Assembly: GCA_004764695.1 (NCBI GenBank)
Contig: SMSO01000032.1
Span: 4,496,483 to 4,560,482 of the forward strand
From: Schizochytrium sp. TIO01
Taxonomy: Eukaryota > Protista > Bigyra: Labyrinthulomycetes
Direction: 5' to 3'
DNA: 64,000 bases
Both the position numbers and the translations under genes were made by a program. Positions 1 through 9,788 of the stretch are shown in pieces. The notes beneath the pieces are model-generated. The model was not told the origin of the DNA. It was given only the letters and a program-made list of their open reading frames with translations, and searched no databases. Within the stretch, counting starts at the first letter, position 1; the number at the start of each line of letters is the position of its first letter.

Positions 1-1
1 T

Positions 2-385
2 GTTGTGCTATGTGTTGTTGACATTCAGAATTGTCAAACTCCTCTTATGCTACTCACCTCGCTCGCATCAGCTAATGATTTTACTGTGATCCTTTGTTGG
101 AGTCAACAAGAATGTGCTCGCTATCTTGAAACATACAAGATCTATGAACGGAAAGCGCCAAAAGCAATTCAAGAGCGCATTGACGCAGGTTACCTACCCA
201 AACTCGAGGACGCACTGACCGTTATACGGTCCGTAAACCGCACAGATGTGAAGGTCTTGTCATCAAATTTTGGGCCTCTCCGCAACATTATGTGCTCCTC
301 TATGGAGGAATTATCTTTATGTCAAGGAATTGGAGACAAGAAGCTGCGTCGATTATATGCCACGTTTAACGACCCTTTCCTGTAA
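2..385 (+). CDS. ERCC1: DNA excision repair protein ERCC1 (C-terminal part; 5' end outside window)
   Basis: Frame is open from the window edge. 'LCWSQQECARYLETYK', 'LTVIRSVNRTDV', 'LSLCQGIGDKK...FNDPF' match the ERCC1/Rad10 central domain end and HhH2 domain. Confidence 0.93.
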   Translation, partial: VVLCVVDIQNCQTPLMLLTSLASANDFTVILCWSQQECARYLETYKIYERKAPKAIQERIDAGYLPKLEDALTVIRSVNRTDVKVLSSNFGPLRNIMCSSMEELSLCQGIGDKKLRRLYATFNDPFL

Positions 386-940
386 TCAAAGTTGCTTTTC
401 TTTGAATAAGTTCAGACAATTGGTCTTCCCAAGCATTTTGACGAAACTGACGGGACAATTGAAATATTATAATATATAGGTCAGTTAACCTTTGGGAACG
501 AAGCTGCGCACGTTTCCATCTAGCTACACCAATAGCAGCAATAGTTTTTCATAGTAAAATCACGCCAATTTATAGTTTGGGACAGAGTCATTATACCTGG
601 AACATATATGTGCTATAGCATGTTATAGAGCTAAAAAATTTCCAATTTCCTCTTCCTACCTAAATCACTTCGCAGGATGTGAGGTTTTACACCTTTAAAA
701 TCCATAAGAGGTGGGCAAGCTAAACTTTCTTGCTTTAGTCTCCACTATTCATACAGGCAGTAGAATTTTGTGTGTTTGTACTGGAAGAAGTGTTCGTCCC
801 ATTTGGGAAAGCAATGACGAAGATGATAAGTGTAGATCAACAAATTGGGATGGGGGGAAATGGAGTTATATTAGCCATGGGCTGCACGGCATTTCGTGCG
901 AACTATATAGCAAGAACCTGCAAATCATGCATAAATTAGC

Positions 941-3900
941 TTACCCGAGGAGTTCTTCCAAGCCTGCCCGGAAACGAGTAACAGCCTTATCAATCTCCTC
1001 TTGTGCAGCAGCGTAGGAGAAGCGAACTCCGTACGACGCGCCAAAAGCATCACCAGGAGGGAGCGCAACGCCGTGATCCTGAATAAGGTAGCTGCAAAGG
1101 TCTGTCGTTGTATTGATTACGCGGCCACTGCGAGACTTTAGGCCCTTGGACAAATAGAACGACACATCTGGAAAGACGTAGAAGGCACCACGAGGTACGG
1201 GGCAGACAACATGCGGAATCTCGCGCAGAGCATTTACAATGCTGTCGCGTTTTACTCGAAGCTGATCGTACAGAGGTGTAAGCATCTCCTCGGGGACCTT
1301 CTCCAATGCTGCAATACCAGCAAACTGGGAGATAGATGAGGCACTCGAGTTCAACTGAGACTGCAACTTCAGCGCGGCTGAACTAATCCGGGCATCCGGA
1401 CTAGCTAAGTAGGCCAGGCGGAATCCAGTCATAGCATAGCCCTTCGAAAAGCCGTTCACGATCATTGTTCTCTCATACATGCCAGGCAGGGATGCAAACG
1501 AGACGTGTTCCAAGCCATCATAAGTGAGCCTCTCGTAAATCTCATCCGAGAGAATCAAAACATGTGCATATCGAGGTTCACGAAGCACTGCGGCCAAGGC
1601 CTCAAGCTCGTCCTTGGAGTAGGTGCAACCAGTTGGGTTACACGGATTGCAAAAAATCAGCACGCGAGTTTGAGGTGTGAGAGCATCGCGAAGTTGGTCA
1701 GGGGTGAGAATGTAATCATTACCCGGCTCTCGGTCGACAATGACAGGCTTTGCGCCACTCAAACGGACAATCTCGGGGTACGAAACCCAGTAAGGAGCTG
1801 GGATAACAACCTCGTCACCTTCTTCGCAAAGAGCCATGATCGCGCAGAAGATTGCTTGCTTTCCGCCATGAGTGATGAGAATGTCCTTGGAAGGGTTGTA
1901 CTGGACATTCTTGCGCTTTGCATAATCGTTACATACAGCCTGCTTCAATTCATGCCAGCCGCCCACAGGAGTGTAGCGAGTCTTGCCTGTATGAGCTGCT
2001 TCAACAACTGCGTCAAGAACAGGCTGAGGGGGGTCAAAGTCTGGCTCTCCAACTGTGAGAGTTGTGACAATATCTTGGCCCTGACGCTGCAACTCAATGG
2101 CAAGAGCATGCGTCTCTGAGGTTTTCGAAGGTTGAATTCTACCAACAAACTTTGTGAGGCGCGTGCCAGTGGTTTCCTTCTCCTGACTTTCCTTATCAGA
2201 AGATTGGCGAAGCTGTTCAACAATTCGATGCATAGCAGCCTCCAATCCTTCAAGCTGCGCAGAAGAATTGGGGTTGCACTTGTACAGGGCACTAAAGAGG
2301 TCGAAAGAATCCTTGCAAGTATTGTCTACCAAGGCAAGAAGGGTCTCAAATCCCTTTGTATTTATCGGCGTTGAACGCAGCTGCAGTTGTGCGAGCATAC
2401 GACCAGTGAAGTGTGTAACAAACTGGCTTCCTGCAGCAGCTTCGTCGTGCATCTCGCATGACATGTCTACCATACGACATCCCGCCTTGCGAAAGATGTC
2501 CAAGAAGGTTTCACAACGCCGGTCGGATTGCAAAAACCCATCCAGCTTGCTGCGACCCACACGCACCTTTTCGTAGACACAGGGAAGGCCTCGCCAAGAA
2601 AACTTTCCTGATTCTGGGCCAAACATTGGGTGAGTGCACAGAATGTCAGCAGAATCCGGAAGAAGAACCTGGAGAACATTCTTAGGAAGCATCTTCACAG
2701 AGAGGACATCAACAACAAGAACGTTATTAAGCAACTCAGTGGGGATAGCACGAACCACCTTTTCAAAGGACAGAATTGAAACAGAGATCACTAAACAATC
2801 AAGACCATCGGCGGCAGCAAACATTTCCTCAACAGTATGAGAAAAATGAACTCCAAGTTCCTTAGCCTGCGAGCTGTAATCGGCACGTGAGCAACCATAA
2901 ACTGAGTGATTGCGGACAAAGGTCTTTGCCAGGAATTGGCCGAAGTTACCAAAACCGATAATTCCAATCTTGAGCTTACGGGAGCCAGCGAAGGTTGCTG
3001 ATCTGCCAGAGCCGGAAGAAGCTACCTCAACCTGAGAGCTTTGAAATGCAGAATGCGTCACTCCAGATGGTACATCAACGGCCTCAGCCACATAGTCGGT
3101 AAGAATTGAGTCTCGTGGGTAGGATCCAAGCACTCGAATGTAACGCGCCATTTCTGTCACATGGCGGATAGCATTTTGGACCTTGGGATCTGACAAAGAT
3201 CCAGCAATATCAACATAGAAGATGAACTGAAACCGTTTAATGCTTGCATCTTCATCCTGCGGTGCTGTAATGCTTGACTCAGCCTCACTGTTTCCCTCCG
3301 TTGCGGACGTCACGGACAAGCGAAGTCTTGCAATTAAGTCCTGGTCTTCTGTAGGGATCATCTGCTCATCACTCTTGCCCTCAGCAACAAGCTCTAAACC
3401 CTGAAGACGAAGCTTATCCGGCCGCGACTCAAGTTTAGTGAGGCTAATGTCTCGAAAGCTGAACGCAGAGAGTGCGCGCACAAGCACCCCAGGGTAGTTT
3501 ACCAAAGAAAATACCATAGTGGTCTTCCATGCAAACGAGGAAGCTCCAGGCGATTGAAGCGGCAACCAGCGTTTTGAGAGCAGAAGGAAGCGAGTGTAAT
3601 TTTCCTCCTCATCCTCAATGCCTGACTGCAACAGTTCAAGACCGTAGTGCTCTGCTGCGAGAGTAGATGCAATAGCAGCGCAGTCGTGAAGCTGCATTTG
3701 GGCAATCATCTTGGCACTGCCTGCAGTGTCGTAGGAGGATTCGCCTGTAAGGCCATTGCTACGAAGGAAACCATCGCATTGTGCCAAAGCTTGGGGATGG
3801 CTCATGACCTTGCGAATCTGATTCATTTGCACGCCCGGGAGCACCATCAGCGAGTGACGTACACGAAAGTTGTGCTCCGCAACAGTAAAAAACTTGTGAC

Positions 3901-4114
3901 GCAGCTGCAAGTCATAATTTGCATGAATACTGCCGCCAAGGCTGTTCTCGATAGGAACAAGCGCAAATTCCACATCACCCTTTGAGACAGCTTCGAAAAC
4001 TGCGTCAAAAGAAGATAGCCCCTTGGTTAAGATGGAGGGGCCTAAGAGTTCAAGTGCAGCTTGCTCGCTGTATGCACCAGGCTCGCCTTGGTAAGCCACG
4101 CGAGGGGGGCTCAT
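941..4114 (-). CDS. Trifunctional arogenate/prephenate dehydratase (PDT+ACT) - arogenate dehydrogenase (TyrA) - class Ib aspartate/prephenate aminotransferase fusion, 1057 aa
   Basis: One uninterrupted ORF. aa ~4-335: VAYQGEPGAYSE, PIENS, SHPQALAQC, NYTRF, LESRP, LGSYP (PDT/ADT + ACT). aa ~380-635: IGIIGFGNFGQFL, HPMFGPESG, HDEAAAGSQFVTHFTGR, STPINTKGFE (plant-type TyrA). aa ~650-1057: PSKT, GEPDF, NPCNPTG, SDEIYE, NGFSKGYAMTGFRL (PLP Lys891). Confidence 0.95.
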   Translation of the reverse strand: MSPPRVAYQGEPGAYSEQAALELLGPSILTKGLSSFDAVFEAVSKGDVEFALVPIENSLGGSIHANYDLQLRHKFFTVAEHNFRVRHSLMVLPGVQMNQIRKVMSHPQALAQCDGFLRSNGLTGESSYDTAGSAKMIAQMQLHDCAAIASTLAAEHYGLELLQSGIEDEEENYTRFLLLSKRWLPLQSPGASSFAWKTTMVFSLVNYPGVLVRALSAFSFRDISLTKLESRPDKLRLQGLELVAEGKSDEQMIPTEDQDLIARLRLSVTSATEGNSEAESSITAPQDEDASIKRFQFIFYVDIAGSLSDPKVQNAIRHVTEMARYIRVLGSYPRDSILTDYVAEAVDVPSGVTHSAFQSSQVEVASSGSGRSATFAGSRKLKIGIIGFGNFGQFLAKTFVRNHSVYGCSRADYSSQAKELGVHFSHTVEEMFAAADGLDCLVISVSILSFEKVVRAIPTELLNNVLVVDVLSVKMLPKNVLQVLLPDSADILCTHPMFGPESGKFSWRGLPCVYEKVRVGRSKLDGFLQSDRRCETFLDIFRKAGCRMVDMSCEMHDEAAAGSQFVTHFTGRMLAQLQLRSTPINTKGFETLLALVDNTCKDSFDLFSALYKCNPNSSAQLEGLEAAMHRIVEQLRQSSDKESQEKETTGTRLTKFVGRIQPSKTSETHALAIELQRQGQDIVTTLTVGEPDFDPPQPVLDAVVEAAHTGKTRYTPVGGWHELKQAVCNDYAKRKNVQYNPSKDILITHGGKQAIFCAIMALCEEGDEVVIPAPYWVSYPEIVRLSGAKPVIVDREPGNDYILTPDQLRDALTPQTRVLIFCNPCNPTGCTYSKDELEALAAVLREPRYAHVLILSDEIYERLTYDGLEHVSFASLPGMYERTMIVNGFSKGYAMTGFRLAYLASPDARISSAALKLQSQLNSSASSISQFAGIAALEKVPEEMLTPLYDQLRVKRDSIVNALREIPHVVCPVPRGAFYVFPDVSFYLSKGLKSRSGRVINTTTDLCSYLIQDHGVALPPGDAFGASYGVRFSYAAAQEEIDKAVTRFRAGLEELLG

Positions 4115-7100
4115 GGTGCCTGACGCTTAAGCGAAAGCAAGTAAAAGCACTCACTAAGGAAGGCAAGCTCTAGATGTTATAGACGCAGGCAGTAGCAGAA
4201 GACAATGTTGATCTCTCAGAAGAGGTAATACTGATCTGCCTCTACTTGAGCATGATGAATCATCATCTGCTACACCACTCCCTCGCTCTTTGCATATAAG
4301 GAAATCCTTAGGATATTTAATTATCTAATACTAGCTATTCATTTACACCCTTGCTATGAGTAACTCTACACGTCAAAAGTTTAGCAGCGTAAACTTTCAT
4401 TAATAAATAGTAGTAGTCAACTACCTCTAGGTAGAATCAGCTTTTTTCTTTTTCTCTAGGCCGAGCTAGTATATTGTAATGGTGCATAGTGACAACTTTT
4501 TTTTCTTTATTATTATTATTATAAATGTATATTGATGAAATAAGGTAGGTAATACCTGCACCCAATTATAGATAGTTCGCCCTGTGTTTCTGCGGAGAAC
4601 ATTATTCGAATGCTCTCCAACATTTGAATTGAAGAGTCTTGGAAGATTACTAAGATAAACTTTGTTTGCCTTCTACTCTGCGCTCAATTGCTCTCTTTGA
4701 TTGATCAACAAGATCGTGGTTTTTTACTTTACGCGTTGAGTTTTCATGACTTCATTGTTACCTTCATTAAGATAGCTTATGACTGACTCCCCACGCCAGC
4801 GAAATCACCCATTCACATCGCATGTATAGTACATCATCATTCATTCACGAACGAACGAACGATGATTCCAGGAACAAGTCATTTGAAATAGTGAGAGAAT
4901 AGAAAAAAAGGAATTAAAACATTATATGTGTTTGCTTTTTGTTATTTACTCTTTCCCTTCTTTCCCCTCCCCCCTCTTTTTCAGTATCGACCCTTAGTAA
5001 GGCACCTTTGGAACTAAGTTATCTACTACCCTCTAATTACCACCATTAATGATGAGTTCATAATAACAGCGCTGATGTCTCCTTTTTTCTTCACTCCTTG
5101 TTCAATGAATCTAAGATGTGAAGGGAAGAGAAAGAAACCCACCAAAACAACTCAGAGCATAGATAGGAAAAGACGCAAGAAAGAGTGTTTTATCAATATA
5201 ATTCATTCCTTGGTCTATCTTAGATAATCTATCCATAGTTAGACTACCTCATCCTGGTGAAGTTTATTTTATTTAGTCTTCTTTTTTTGTTTCATATTTA
5301 ATATAGTAGTAGTAATGTCCCTAATGGTATGTTGGTTCCCAGCCCAACCTCATCTCCCTCTTACTAAATTGGTTGTTTACTTCTTTTATAGATGTATTGG
5401 GAAAATCTAGTTTTGTTTTTTTGGTCCCTAATATAGAACCATTTAGACCATGAAAATCAATAAATAAAATATTTAATACAAATAAAATATAAAATATATA
5501 ATTTACAAAATAATAATATTTGAACAAAGTAATTTTGTAATATTTCATTAATATTTTGATATATTTTGAAACATATTACAAAAATTTATGTAAATTCCTT
5601 GAAGTTTGACATTGCTAGAGTATCATGTGAGCTTATTTGGTTGATTTAAAAATTTTCGTAGAAGTTTGTTGCTGTTTCTAAGTTTATTTGATCTAATCTA
5701 TAATAGGACAATCATTGGGCTATATAGCGCTAACAGGTGCCACAAGAAATAATAAGAGATGGTAAGTAAATATATTTAATACCCTTAAAAACTAGTATAC
5801 TTTTTCCTTTTTTAGAAATAAGATATAGATTTCTAAGAATAGATAGAGTCTGATTAATCTGTTCTTTTCAAAGTAGAATATCGAATATTCATGATGTTGT
5901 GTTGTGTGTCTGTGTTTCAGAAAGATTTATCTGCCCTTTCTCTGAACGAAATACAACAAAACAAATTTAAACAATACTTACGTCGTTGGTAAGACATCAC
6001 ATCCGTACTCGATCAACATCAGCGTTAACTAATCCGATCCACCCCCCAATCCTAACAATAAATTTAGGACCCAGATCATTCTCTAAGAGTTCTTGCACAT
6101 TTTATTTTAGCCTAAATAAAACCTTGTTAATTAATTACTGTAAGTAAGGTAAGGGCGCCTGGTTAATTAATTTTCATTAAATTATTTATCTCTAACATTA
6201 GCTGGCAAGAGCAATACATCACATACATCATTATTTTATATTTATCTCCGTGGTTGAGCTCTACTTTATCTCACACAGATGTTTGATCCTTGTCTATTTT
6301 ATTATCAACGACAGTGGCAAATAAATCATATTTATGTTTTATGTTTTTTTATTCGAGGTCTCAATTAGTTAGTCGCATGCAACCAGGATGACTAAGTTAT
6401 CAATATAAACTGTTAGATCATCTTTTTCTTCAAAACAACCATTTATGATAAGTTTCAAATTTGCAGTTTTCGAATTCTTCATTTATTTATTCATTTTAAT
6501 TATAAAAACAGAGAGTTATACTGCAGTCCTAGTTAACCTCTCCAGATTATCAAACATCTCTCCTATTTTAAGTCCCGTACACAATTATTTGTAGTGAGTA
6601 ACAAACTCTTGAGGCAATAGATCACATCTCCACTATTGCTAGGTTCACTTTCTGAAGTACTTAATTGGAAGATACTTTAATAAGATATTCTCCGAGGTCT
6701 ATCTATATATGCAAAGTACTGACGATTTTAGAATCCCTTCTCTGTTTCCTACTTTTGCCATTTATGTGCACTTTAAAAAAAAATAGGTTAGCATAAATGA
6801 TAGCAACTTGCTGATTTGGTTAGATGATCTTGGTAAGTAACGTTCACTGCTAAAGTACGCAGGATTATAGATCTGAGTGGCTTGTTATGTTCATTAGGTG
6901 GCTGACTAATTTTTCAATTAACTTTCAATCGAAGAGCCGAAAGTTAAGATCCTTTCAATCTTACATCTTATCTTGCAGCTTCGTGCTGATCATGTATGTA
7001 TCTGTGGTTCGATTTTCTATGACCTAACTACTTAAGTTAATGGTATGTTTTTCCTGTTTACCCGAATGCAGAAACCAATTTCAACTATTAACGTTTTATC

Positions 7101-8843: not shown

Positions 8844-9788
8844 CTATGACGAGGACTGAAGCGCCTGCAAATGACGTTTCCAGGTCACTGCTTTCGCTTT
8901 GAGGATAAGAATTGCGCGACGAATAATTTCCATTGGCGGCAAGGATCCCACACTTTCTACGCTAAAGATGAAATGGTCCGAGACACGGTAGAGTTCGACG
9001 CAGTCTTTAAATTCGTCAAGGCGAATGCACTCGCGGCACATTGTACATCTCCGGGGATCCCGAACAGTGAGTGTGCCTGCATCTTCGATGTCGAATACAT
9101 CTCGCGGGCAGGCCTCTTTGATGGCCATTGCCACATCTCCGTTAGCGAGTTTCTGGTTTACGTCGATCTTCGGCATAATACGATATGTGGCAGTTGCAAC
9201 TGGGGACCACTTAGCATGATCTTGGCCCTTACCAACACGGCAAACAGCACGCATGTGAATTTGCTGTCCTGGCAAAAGTTTCGCGAGGAGGATATCCTTG
9301 TGCACAGGGCGAGGCTCGAACTGGGCCCAATACTCCTTTTGATCAGGGAATTTGCTTTCTGGGCTCTCATCTGGCTGGAAAATGAGATCTGAAGAGTAGA
9401 CATTCATGGGCTTACCTTTGCACGTAATGGTAAGCTCGAAGAAGAGAGGTTCGTTTGGGCGCACGTGACGGGGGTCTACGGCAAGCGGCACCATAGCTAC
9501 GCGGTGTACAAGAACTTCATCTGGGATAATCGACGTGTTTTGCATGAGACCAATCTGGTCCACAGCAACGGTTTCCACTTCTGCAATCATGATGCGGCGG
9601 AGCGCATTCGCGATAGATGGATCCGTGTTCAGAAGCTCGAACCGAACACGGAGAATCTTCTCCTCCTCCAGAACACGCTCGTCGGAATCAAAGGGCTCGA
9701 TGAATTGAACCTTGATGTCATCGAGGGATTTAAACTCAGACTCGCGGCTGAAGAGGCGGTGAGGGCCATCGTTGTCGACACGAAACAT
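8844..9788 (-). CDS. POLR1C: DNA-directed RNA polymerase I/III subunit RPAC1 (AC40)
   Basis: 'DPSIANALRRIMIAEV', 'NTSIIPDEVLVHRVAMVP', 'DILLAKLLPGQ', 'GQDHAKWSPVATATYR', 'CPRDVFDIE', 'RCTMCREC', 'DHFIFSVESVG' are RPC40/POLR1C signatures. Confidence 0.95.
   Translation of the reverse strand: MFRVDNDGPHRLFSRESEFKSLDDIKVQFIEPFDSDERVLEEEKILRVRFELLNTDPSIANALRRIMIAEVETVAVDQIGLMQNTSIIPDEVLVHRVAMVPLAVDPRHVRPNEPLFFELTITCKGKPMNVYSSDLIFQPDESPESKFPDQKEYWAQFEPRPVHKDILLAKLLPGQQIHMRAVCRVGKGQDHAKWSPVATATYRIMPKIDVNQKLANGDVAMAIKEACPRDVFDIEDAGTLTVRDPRRCTMCRECIRLDEFKDCVELYRVSDHFIFSVESVGSLPPMEIIRRAILILKAKAVTWKRHLQALQSSS

What the first reader, a model, noticed from the sequence alone, without database searches (positions are those of the whole stretch)
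941..4114. Entire post-prephenate Phe/Tyr (arogenate) pathway on one polypeptide: ADT-ACT / ADH / prephenate aminotransferase
Seen: three complete enzyme domains in one stop-free ORF, with the PDT domain starting at residue 4, so no signal or plastid presequence. Established: PAT turns prephenate into arogenate, ADT turns arogenate into Phe and ADH turns it into Tyr; in plants these are separate plastid enzymes. Specificity residues point to the arogenate route. Gln661 precedes PSKT, the K/R/Q position-12 signature (Thermus numbering) of prephenate-competent 1-beta AATs. Asp602 in 'KDSFDL' is the acidic residue equivalent to position 222 of plant TyrA, linked to arogenate specificity and Tyr inhibition. 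Inference: a cytosolic branch-point enzyme that makes arogenate and splits it between Phe and Tyr, possibly with channelling. I recall related fusions in other stramenopiles such as oomycetes but cannot verify this, so novelty may lie in biochemistry rather than architecture.
Basis: partly seen in the sequence, partly recalled or inferred. Interest (0 to 1): 0.85.

Follow-up and report, generated by a model that had tools for sequence, protein, structure and literature searches.

The report
Three-enzyme Phe/Tyr fusion protein, thraustochytrid
This is a real, expressed single gene that joins the last three enzymes of phenylalanine and tyrosine synthesis into one cytosolic protein, but the same fusion is already catalogued in many protists (and, as found here, in marine giant viruses), so only its biochemistry is new ground.

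Summary
Window 941-4114 (-) is one stop-free, intron-less ORF of 1057 aa. It carries a prephenate/arogenate dehydratase plus ACT domain, a plant-type TyrA dehydrogenase and a class-Ib Asp/prephenate aminotransferase. Contigs from three probable RNA studies cover it without joints and end 75-98 nt upstream of the ATG. A near-identical complete MMETSP transcript also exists.

Both residue claims hold. Asp602 aligns with position 222 of soybean PDH1, and Gln661 aligns with Lys80 of Arabidopsis PPA-AT. Asp602 is conserved in 99 of 101 family members. Position 661 is K/R/Q in only 22 of 101, so it is a weak marker. The Thr84 and Lys169 equivalents are better conserved (99 and 100 of 101).

The host is a plastid-less thraustochytrid (78% identity to Hondaea), so the missing presequence is expected. 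This gene holds the genome's only competent PDT, only TyrA and only PPA-AT-type aminotransferase.

The architecture is not new. Same-length fusions occur in oomycetes, labyrinthulomycetes, Emiliania, Chromera, dinoflagellates, Arcella and giant-virus MAGs, and several are annotated as such. I found no biochemical characterisation. Whether the dehydratase uses arogenate or prephenate, and whether arogenate is channelled, remain untested. The scan had not noted this feature elsewhere.

The parts
941..4114 (-). Complete CDS, 1057 codons plus the stop at 941-943; single exon
   Evidence: ORF. RNA-type contigs X1, X5 and X12 cover it with no joints; complete 1057-aa MMETSP ORF, 1055/1057 identical to P0001.
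4115..4212 (-). 5' UTR. The three RNA-type contigs end at 4189, 4204 and 4212; an in-frame stop lies 5 codons upstream of the ATG
   Evidence: The DNA-type run X21 continues through to 6000.
507..940 (-). 3' UTR (minimum extent; the X1 contig ends at 507). It converges on the 3' end of an ERCC1/Rad10 gene
3569..4102 (-). Prephenate/arogenate dehydratase catalytic domain, residues 5-182. The T-R-F motif (T174) is at 3587-3595
   Evidence: (2QMX, E 6e-62)
3113..3532 (-). ACT regulatory domain, residues 195-334, with G-V-L-V (209-212) and E-S-R-P (229-232; 3419-3430) motifs
   Evidence: ESRP conserved in at least 100 of 101 members
3239..3412 (-). Lineage-variable loop insertion in the ACT domain, residues 235-292; part helical, part disordered (pLDDT below 50 at 275-289)
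   Evidence: gap against 2QMX; the surrounding segment (window residues 233-296) measures 5-91 aa across the family, and 50-72 aa in the thraustochytrid clade..
2996..3112 (-). Linker 1, residues 335-373; pLDDT below 50 at 366-377
2207..2995 (-). Plant-type (clade I) TyrA dehydrogenase, residues 374-636. Rossmann G-F-G-N-F-G at 387-392, H-P-M-F-G-P at 495-500, Thr599 (2318-2320), Asp602 (2309-2311)
   Evidence: soybean PDH1, E 3e-72; best score against the N222D mutant chains. D602 conserved in 99/101 and T599 in 96/101. (invariant columns).
2159..2206 (-). Linker 2, residues 637-652; pLDDT below 50 at 643-649
944..2158 (-). Class-Ib aspartate/prephenate aminotransferase, residues 653-1057. 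Gln661 (2132-2134), Thr665 (2120-2122), Lys752 (1859-1861), PLP lysine Lys891 (1442-1444)
   Evidence: Arabidopsis PPA-AT 5WMH, E 4e-97; NCBIfam AspAT models

Best explanation
A nuclear, intron-less gene of a thraustochytrid (Labyrinthulomycetes, a stramenopile group without plastids) encodes one cytosolic polypeptide of about 115 kDa made of three independently folded enzymes joined by two short flexible linkers. The order from N to C is: (1) a prephenate/arogenate dehydratase with its Phe-sensing ACT domain; (2) an arogenate-type (Asp222) TyrA dehydrogenase, probably NADP-dependent; (3) a PLP-dependent class-Ib aminotransferase of the prephenate-aminotransferase type. Prephenate comes from the genome's single chorismate mutase, which is itself fused to a degenerate PDT/ACT sensor. 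The C-terminal module transaminates prephenate to arogenate. The middle module oxidatively decarboxylates arogenate to Tyr. The N-terminal module dehydrates and decarboxylates arogenate, and/or prephenate, towards Phe. Control is expected from Phe binding at the ACT domain and from Tyr competing at the Asp602 site. Shown here: the gene, its transcript, the domain identities, the catalytic and diagnostic residues, uniqueness in the genome, and wide conservation of the architecture. Inferred: substrate preferences, cofactor, regulation, cytosolic location and any channelling.
For: ORF and domains. Best solved relatives: Arabidopsis PPA-AT (329 bits, against 238 bits for Thermus AspAT), soybean PDH1 (246 bits, highest against the N222D mutants) and Chlorobium PDT. 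Diagnostic residues are present and nearly invariant in 101 full-length relatives: D602 99/101, T599 96/101, T665 99/101, K752 100/101, K891 99/101, ESRP at least 100/101. The Asp222 rule for arogenate specificity was read in PMC5681985. Single transcript with no upstream exon. Complete MMETSP ORF. AF2 model with mean pLDDT 90.8 shows three confident modules, with low confidence only in the two linkers and the ACT loop. Own-genome census: one strong PDT hit, one PDH_N hit, both this gene; the next aminotransferase is only 31% identical; a single CM at C24 carries a truncated PDT remnant; chorismate synthase is present. Architecture conserved across many protist lineages.
Against: No enzymology exists for any member that I could find. 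ADT versus PDT preference is not predictable from sequence (PMC13217925). The position-12 K/R/Q marker is present here but varies in the family, so it cannot carry the PAT assignment alone. pTM of 0.48 means the inter-domain geometry is unknown, and therefore so is channelling. A phenylalanine hydroxylase gene offers a second route to Tyr, so the ADH module need not be essential. The RNA nature of the runs is the tool's guess; it is supported by their contigs ending at the gene boundary while the DNA-type run continues.
Confidence: 0.8

Rival explanations
1. Mixed-route enzyme. Tyr is made through arogenate (AT then ADH). The N-terminal module is a true prephenate dehydratase that makes phenylpyruvate, which the same or another aminotransferase converts to Phe. 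Only half of the arogenate reading would then hold.
For: The dehydratase's best solved relative is a bacterial PDT (Chlorobium 2QMX), and NCBIfam names it prephenate dehydratase. Specificity determinants lie in the ACT 'PAC' region and differ between families, so PDT activity cannot be excluded. The fused aminotransferase is needed by the Asp222-type ADH regardless of what the dehydratase uses.
Against: Plant ADTs are reported as sister to Chlorobi/Bacteroidetes PDTs (stated in PMC5681985), so similarity to 2QMX does not separate ADT from PDT. Fusion of all three modules is most economical if arogenate is the shared intermediate.
Confidence: 0.3
2. The aminotransferase module is a general aspartate aminotransferase with no useful prephenate activity, and the fusion serves another purpose such as nitrogen supply or stability.
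For: NCBIfam top hits are generic AspAT models, all below their curated cut-offs. Position 12 is not conserved as K/R/Q in the family.
Against: The best PDB match is the bifunctional Asp/prephenate aminotransferase of Arabidopsis, with the Thr84 and Lys169 equivalents conserved. It is permanently fused to an Asp222-type TyrA, which needs arogenate. There is no other PPA-AT-like gene in the genome.
Confidence: 0.06
3. Artefact: three adjacent genes merged by assembly or by read-through, or a polyprotein that is never functional as one chain.
For: None specific. Contigs cannot prove a single mRNA molecule, and proteolytic processing at the linkers is untested.
Against: The frame is continuous with no stops. 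Identical structure is seen in contigs from four independent studies, including a DNA-type run, and in a complete MMETSP ORF. More than 100 same-length orthologues come from genomes and transcriptomes of distant lineages.
Confidence: 0.03

Closest known systems
Orthologous PDT-ACT / TyrA / aminotransferase proteins of Hondaea fermentalgiana, oomycetes (Phytophthora, Pythium, Albugo, Bremia and others), Emiliania, Chromera, Prorocentrum, Amorphochlora and Arcella (database entries)
   Same: Same three domains in the same order and about the same length (roughly 950-1100 aa). Identity is 78% to Hondaea and 41-44% to oomycetes. The same diagnostic residues are present.
   Different: The thraustochytrid clade has the longest ACT-loop insertion (50-72 aa against about 30 in oomycetes) and carries Q/R/S at position 661 where oomycetes carry T/A/S/K. 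I found no characterisation of any member.
Arabidopsis prephenate aminotransferase PPA-AT (PDB 5WMH, 6F5V)
   Same: Class-Ib fold, E 4e-97. The PLP lysine and the Thr84 and Lys169 equivalents are conserved. Gln is present where Arabidopsis has Lys80.
   Different: The plant enzyme is stand-alone and carries a plastid transit peptide (the alignment starts at chain residue 72). Here it is the C-terminal module of a cytosolic fusion.
Plant TyrA arogenate dehydrogenases / soybean PDH1 (PDB 5T95, 5T9F, 5T9E)
   Same: Alignable end to end, E 3e-72. Asp is at position 222 and Thr at 219, as in arogenate-specific plant enzymes and as in the engineered N222D and M219T/N222D soybean mutants (PMC5681985).
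   Different: Wild-type soybean PDH1 has Asn222 and uses prephenate. The plant enzymes are not fused to a dehydratase or an aminotransferase.
Chlorobium tepidum prephenate dehydratase (PDB 2QMX) and plant arogenate dehydratases
   Same: PDT catalytic domain plus ACT domain, with T-R-F and E-S-R-P motifs.
   Different: A 58-residue insertion follows E-S-R-P. Substrate preference is unknown.
Bacterial bifunctional P-protein (CM-PDT) and T-protein (CM-PDH)
   Same: Fusion of consecutive or branch-point enzymes of Phe/Tyr synthesis, with allosteric control.
   Different: There is no chorismate mutase module in this ORF. The partners differ and the route goes through arogenate. The genome's CM is a separate gene carrying only a dead PDT remnant.
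Nannochloropsis oceanica ADT-ADH fused gene (PMC3499364, Fig. S5C)
   Same: Dehydratase and dehydrogenase fused in another stramenopile.
   Different: It is described as a two-enzyme fusion, with the aminotransferase left unassigned in that paper.

Membership tests
Prephenate/arogenate dehydratase with ACT domain (Pfam PF00800 + PF01842) | PDT domain above the curated cut-off | tested here: met
   195-198 bits against a cut-off of 25.2
Prephenate/arogenate dehydratase with ACT domain (Pfam PF00800 + PF01842) | Catalytic Thr of the T-R-F motif | tested here: met
   T174-R175-F176. R175 is invariant and T174 nearly invariant in alignment A2.
Prephenate/arogenate dehydratase with ACT domain (Pfam PF00800 + PF01842) | ACT domain with G-x-L-x and E-S-R-P effector-site motifs | tested here: met
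   G209-V-L-V and E229-S-R-P. ESRP is conserved in at least 100 of 101 members. Both ACT halves align to 2QMX around the insertion. The Pfam ACT score alone is below its cut-off (19.2 against 27).
Prephenate/arogenate dehydratase with ACT domain (Pfam PF00800 + PF01842) | Preference for arogenate (ADT) over prephenate (PDT) | not testable with these tools
   The determinants are family-specific residues of the PAC region, and no structure with substrate exists (PMC13217925).
Clade I (plant-type) TyrA arogenate dehydrogenase | Full-length similarity to plant TyrA, with the Rossmann glycine motif and the H-P-M-F-G-P catalytic His | tested here: met
   E 3e-72 to soybean PDH1 over 271 residues. 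G387, G392 and H495 are invariant in alignment A2.
Clade I (plant-type) TyrA arogenate dehydrogenase | Acidic residue at position 222 (arogenate specificity, Tyr sensitivity) | tested here: met
   Asp602 aligns with position 222. The query scores higher against the N222D chains than against wild type. Conserved in 99/101 members. The rule was read in PMC5681985.
Clade I (plant-type) TyrA arogenate dehydrogenase | NADP+ dependence and measured ADH activity | not testable with these tools
   Inferred only from homology.
Class-Ib aspartate/prephenate aminotransferase (PPA-AT type) | Aminotran_1_2 fold with the PLP-binding Lys | tested here: met
   209 bits. Lys891 aligns with At Lys306, the residue changed in the K306A chain 5WML. 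Conserved in 99/101.
Class-Ib aspartate/prephenate aminotransferase (PPA-AT type) | Thr84 and Lys169 equivalents (the residues mutated in the Arabidopsis structures 5WMI and 5WMK) | tested here: met
   Thr665 and Lys752, conserved in 99/101 and 100/101. Their role in prephenate recognition is recalled from Dornfeld 2014 and Holland 2018, which I could not read here.
Class-Ib aspartate/prephenate aminotransferase (PPA-AT type) | Lys/Arg/Gln at Thermus position 12 | tested here: met
   Gln661 aligns with At Lys80. By offset it equals Thermus residue 12 (query 9 pairs with chain 4). Only 22/101 fusion proteins have K/R/Q, so it is a poor family marker. The rule's source (Graindorge 2014, Giustini 2019) is recalled and was not read here.
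Class-Ib aspartate/prephenate aminotransferase (PPA-AT type) | Measured prephenate aminotransferase activity | not testable with these tools
   Needs an enzyme assay.
Bacterial P-protein / T-protein (CM-fused PDT or PDH) | Chorismate mutase domain on the same chain | tested here: not met
   There is no CM_2 hit in the ORF. The only CM in the genome is on contig C24.

The most novel reading that the evidence does not exclude
The fusion is a true branch-point metabolon. Arogenate made by the C-terminal module would be handed directly to the two competing modules, with Phe (at the ACT domain) and Tyr (at the Asp602 site) setting the split, possibly in complex with the CM-pseudoPDT-ACT protein. 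In addition, the patchy spread of the fusion over stramenopiles, alveolates, haptophytes, rhizarians and Amoebozoa could owe something to giant viruses, which carry an intact copy.
Probability: 0.12. Interest if true: 0.65.

Novelty: new member of a known kind. Interest (0 to 1): 0.3.

Why it matters
**Natural test system.** All three catalytic types are well known, and the fused architecture already sits in public databases for many protists, so the gene itself is not a discovery. Its value is as a single-chain version of the plant arogenate branch point. It could be used to measure channelling, to probe ADT versus PDT specificity, and to study how Phe and Tyr feedback partition flux.

**Pathway reconstruction.** Published reconstructions for diatoms and Pythium concluded that Tyr can come only from Phe hydroxylation (PMC3901274, PMC6598237). 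Those may have missed a TyrA domain hidden inside a protein named 'aminotransferase'.

**Applied angle.** In thraustochytrids this one gene, together with the CM fusion, is the obvious engineering handle for aromatic products.

**Giant viruses.** Intact copies in mimivirid-like giant-virus bins add to the evidence that such viruses carry host amino-acid metabolism genes.

Tried and rejected
- my first two PDB searches used out-of-frame coordinates. I corrected them.
- **Literature on the triple fusion:** searches found no paper describing or assaying it. Dornfeld 2014 (PMC4145135) and Graindorge 2014 (tried as PMC3916524, an id recalled from memory) are not held, so the Thr84/Lys169 and position-12 rules rest on my recall plus the mutant PDB chains.
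- **Prokaryotic origin of the ~935-aa marine clade:** no relative was found in 185,579 species genomes using P0098. A single-protein scan of viral contigs also found nothing. The alignment-based scan succeeded.
- **AT-domain tree:** the backbone is unresolved and stand-alone algal and Rhodothermales enzymes interleave with fused ones. It neither supports nor rejects a single origin of the fusion, so I draw no donor or direction from it.
- **MMETSP header TAXON_ID 87120:** it resolves to a basidiomycete, so I rejected it as a label.
- **Earlier scan notes:** nothing on this gene or pathway.
- **Not run:** Complex prediction (I make no binding claim) and fold search (sequence matches to solved structures were already decisive).
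Full report
**Observation.** It spans window 941..4114 on the minus strand, starts with ATG and encodes 1057 codons. An in-frame stop lies five codons upstream of the ATG. GC drops from about 0.50 in the CDS to about 0.36 in the upstream spacer.

Pfam finds PDT at 6-182 (E 1e-57), PDH_N at 400-502 (3e-11) and Aminotran_1_2 at 682-1047 (1e-61). NCBIfam agrees, with prephenate dehydratase and aspartate aminotransferase models. The ACT domain scores weakly in Pfam. The reason is a 58-residue loop at residues 235-292, just after the E-S-R-P motif, that interrupts it. Both halves align to the ACT domain of Chlorobium PDT 2QMX.

**Gene model and expression.** I laid contigs from four public runs over window 1-6000. 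Three runs of transcriptome size, from three different studies, each give one contig across the whole ORF with no joints. Those contigs end at 4212, 4204 and 4189, which is 75-98 nt upstream of the ATG. The run of genome size continues through the AT-rich spacer to 6000.

The tool labels the RNA status of these runs as a guess. The shared ends at the gene boundary argue that they are RNA.

Independently, the 90%-identity cluster of the window's protein contains a complete 1057-aa ORF from an MMETSP transcriptome, 1055/1057 identical to P0001. The message is therefore single and unspliced, and no upstream exon could add a targeting peptide.

In the AlphaFold2 model the first strand is residues 5-9, so there is no N-terminal extension. 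The C-terminus (…E-E-L-L-G) is not a PTS1-like tripeptide by my reading. Cytosolic location is the default inference, but it has not been shown.

**Organism and genomic context.**
- The closest named full-length relative is from Hondaea fermentalgiana, at 78% identity.
- In the AT-domain tree the protein sits in a starred clade (SH-aLRT 96-97) of Hondaea-like and MMETSP sequences.
- The window therefore comes from a thraustochytrid. I recall MMETSP0960 as Aurantiochytrium limacinum, but I did not verify this, and the header's taxon id is wrong.
- Labyrinthulomycetes have no plastid (my own knowledge), so the missing plastid presequence is expected.
- The neighbouring genes are unrelated: a convergent ERCC1/Rad10 3' end at 5-385 and an Rpb3-like subunit at 8844-9788.

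A census of the 64-Mb assembly gave these results:
- **PDT:** one strong hit, which is this gene.
- **PDH_N:** one hit, also this gene.
- **Aminotransferases:** the next most similar one is only 31% identical.
- **Chorismate synthase:** present.
- **Chorismate mutase:** one gene, on contig C24.
- **Phenylalanine hydroxylase:** present, so Tyr can also be made from Phe.

The chorismate mutase is of the eukaryotic type (TIGR01802, 241 bits). It carries a C-terminal PDT remnant and an ACT domain. The remnant lacks about 100 residues of the catalytic core. The trifunctional gene is therefore the only credible dehydratase in the genome. Two genes together would cover chorismate to Phe and Tyr.

**Specificity residues: aminotransferase module.** Its best solved relative is the bifunctional Asp/prephenate aminotransferase of Arabidopsis (5WMH, 329 bits), compared with 238 bits for Thermus AspAT.
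- Gln661 aligns with At Lys80. By offset this is Thermus residue 12.
- Thr665, Lys752 and Lys891 align with Thr84, Lys169 and Lys306. These are exactly the positions altered in the deposited mutant chains 5WMI, 5WMK and 5WML.
- Across 101 full-length fusion proteins, Thr665 is conserved in 99, Lys752 in 100 and Lys891 in 99.
- Position 661 is K/R/Q in only 22 of the 101. Oomycetes carry T, A or S there.
- The local alignment around 661 is in register.

Gln661 is correctly identified, but it is weak evidence on its own. The literature behind the position-12 rule and the Thr84/Lys169 rule could not be read here, so I cite it from memory.

**Specificity residues: dehydrogenase module.** It aligns end to end with soybean PDH1 (E 3e-72).
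- Asp602 falls on position 222 and Thr599 on position 219.
- The query scores best against the N222D and M219T/N222D mutant chains and lowest against the Asn222 wild type.
- Asp602 is conserved in 99/101 members.
- The rule that an acidic residue at 222 confers arogenate specificity in plant and related microbial TyrAs is stated in PMC5681985.

**Specificity residues: dehydratase module.** The T-R-F and E-S-R-P motifs are intact. However, a 2026 study concludes that ADT versus PDT preference depends on family-specific residues of the ACT 'PAC' region and cannot be predicted from sequence (PMC13217925). I leave that point open.

**Structure.** AlphaFold2 run on a 60-sequence alignment gives mean pLDDT 90.8. 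Confidence is low only at 275-289 (the ACT loop), 366-377 (linker 1) and 643-649 (linker 2). The protein is three well-folded modules on flexible tethers. pTM of 0.48 means the relative placement of the modules is unknown, so the model says nothing about channelling.

**How it most likely works.** The C-terminal module makes arogenate from prephenate and Glu or Asp. The middle module turns arogenate into Tyr. The N-terminal module makes Phe from arogenate, or phenylpyruvate from prephenate. Phe acts on the ACT domain, and Tyr competes at the Asp602 site. The domain identities and key residues are shown; substrates, cofactor and regulation are inferred.

I put 0.8 on 'one cytosolic trifunctional PAT/ADH/dehydratase chain'. 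I put about 0.55-0.6 on the stricter claim that both branches run through arogenate.

**Comparison with what is known.** The architecture is not new. The full-length search returned more than 100 proteins of about 950-1100 aa with the same three domains. They come from oomycetes (Phytophthora, Pythium, Globisporangium, Albugo, Bremia, Peronospora, Lagenidium), labyrinthulomycetes, Emiliania, Chromera, Prorocentrum, Amorphochlora and Arcella. Some are already named 'prephenate dehydratase, prephenate dehydrogenase, aminotransferase'.

In the papers I could search, only a two-enzyme ADT-ADH fusion in Nannochloropsis is mentioned. I found no biochemical study.

The AT module's nearest stand-alone relatives are brown-algal, haptophyte and green-algal enzymes and Rhodothermales/Bacteroidota aminotransferases, at about 50% identity. 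This fits the published placement of plant PPA-AT next to Chlorobi/Bacteroidetes (stated in PMC5681985). My AT tree is too poorly resolved to say whether the fusion arose once.

**Side findings.**
- **Giant viruses.** A ~930-aa clade of the same fusion lies on giant-virus MAG contigs. One contig (L005) is 24% GC and densely packed. Its neighbours are a mitochondrial carrier, an IBR/Ariadne ligase, DUF5759 and topoisomerase IA. No close relative of this clade's representative P0098 was found in 185,579 prokaryotic species genomes. Shikimate and TyrA genes in giant-virus MAGs have been noted before (PMC8005611).
- **Companion CM fusion.** The CM-PDT-like-ACT fusion co-occurs in thraustochytrids, oomycetes, chromerids, Balamuthia and Diplonema. 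It looks catalytically dead in the two stramenopile groups.

**Verdict.** Novelty is low: it is a new member of a catalogued but uncharacterised fusion family. Interest is modest, and it rises only if channelling or an unusual control mechanism is demonstrated.

Noticed in passing
L005:4085-6892 (+) (IMG/VR GVMAG-S-ERX556043-36); also L004:640-3438 and L006:5616-7217: An intact ~935-aa copy of the same PDT-ACT/TyrA/aminotransferase fusion sits on giant-virus MAG contigs. L005 is 24% GC, dense and intron-less, and carries a mitochondrial carrier, an IBR/Ariadne E3 ligase, DUF5759 and topoisomerase IA. The clade is 35-37% identical to the window protein and keeps the Asp222 equivalent. Scanning 185,579 prokaryotic species genomes with its representative P0098 found no relative.
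   Followed up: partly
L002:1168-2370 (-) = G000 contig C24, about 3805541-3806743: This is the genome's only chorismate mutase (eukaryotic type, TIGR01802 241 bits). It is fused to a truncated PDT remnant plus an ACT domain. A 100% identical complete 399-aa MMETSP ORF exists. The same CM-PDT-like-ACT architecture occurs in oomycetes, Vitrella, Chromera, Balamuthia and Diplonema. Thraustochytrid copies lack about 100 aa of the PDT core, oomycete copies have lost the catalytic Thr, and Balamuthia looks intact. It is probably an amino-acid sensor on CM.
   Followed up: partly
window 2132-2134 (codon 661) and its alignment column in 101 relatives: The Thermus position-12 residue, proposed as a K/R/Q marker of prephenate-competent class-Ib aminotransferases, is A/S/T/E/P/N in most members of this fusion family (22/101 have K/R/Q). 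Either the rule does not transfer to this family or many members use another residue.
   Followed up: partly
literature: PMC3901274 (diatoms) and PMC6598237 (Pythium irregulare): Both pathway reconstructions state that Tyr is made only by hydroxylating Phe because no arogenate or prephenate dehydrogenase gene was found. Several Pythium and Globisporangium species do encode the fusion with a TyrA module. For Pythium at least, that conclusion may therefore be an annotation artefact caused by the protein being named 'aminotransferase'; I did not check diatoms.
   Followed up: no
database labels of relatives: Several labels look wrong. Fusion proteins are named 'exosome complex component RRP43' in JGI. 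A virus-clade member is labelled Methylobacterium sp. (WP_286964811.1). An entry labelled Batrachochytrium salamandrivorans BASA81 groups next to the thraustochytrid clade in the AT tree. The MMETSP0960 header carries TAXON_ID 87120, which is a Rhizopogon mushroom.
   Followed up: no
L007:10001-10810 (266-kb GVMAG-M-3300023184-16 contig): A large giant-virus contig has a match to the TyrA module only (residues 277-538 of the viral query, 44% identity). This suggests a stand-alone or differently fused viral TyrA.
   Followed up: no
window 5-385 (+) and 8844-9788 (-): The neighbours are an ERCC1/Rad10 C-terminal exon and an Rpb3-like RNA polymerase subunit. The ERCC1/Rad10 exon converges on the fusion gene, and RNA-type contigs X5 and X12 run across both 3' ends, so the transcripts may overlap. 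There is no clustering of pathway genes.
   Followed up: partly
G000 contig C3:119204-120154 (+): There is a strong phenylalanine hydroxylase (Biopterin_H) match (465 bits), so this thraustochytrid can probably also make Tyr from Phe.
   Followed up: no
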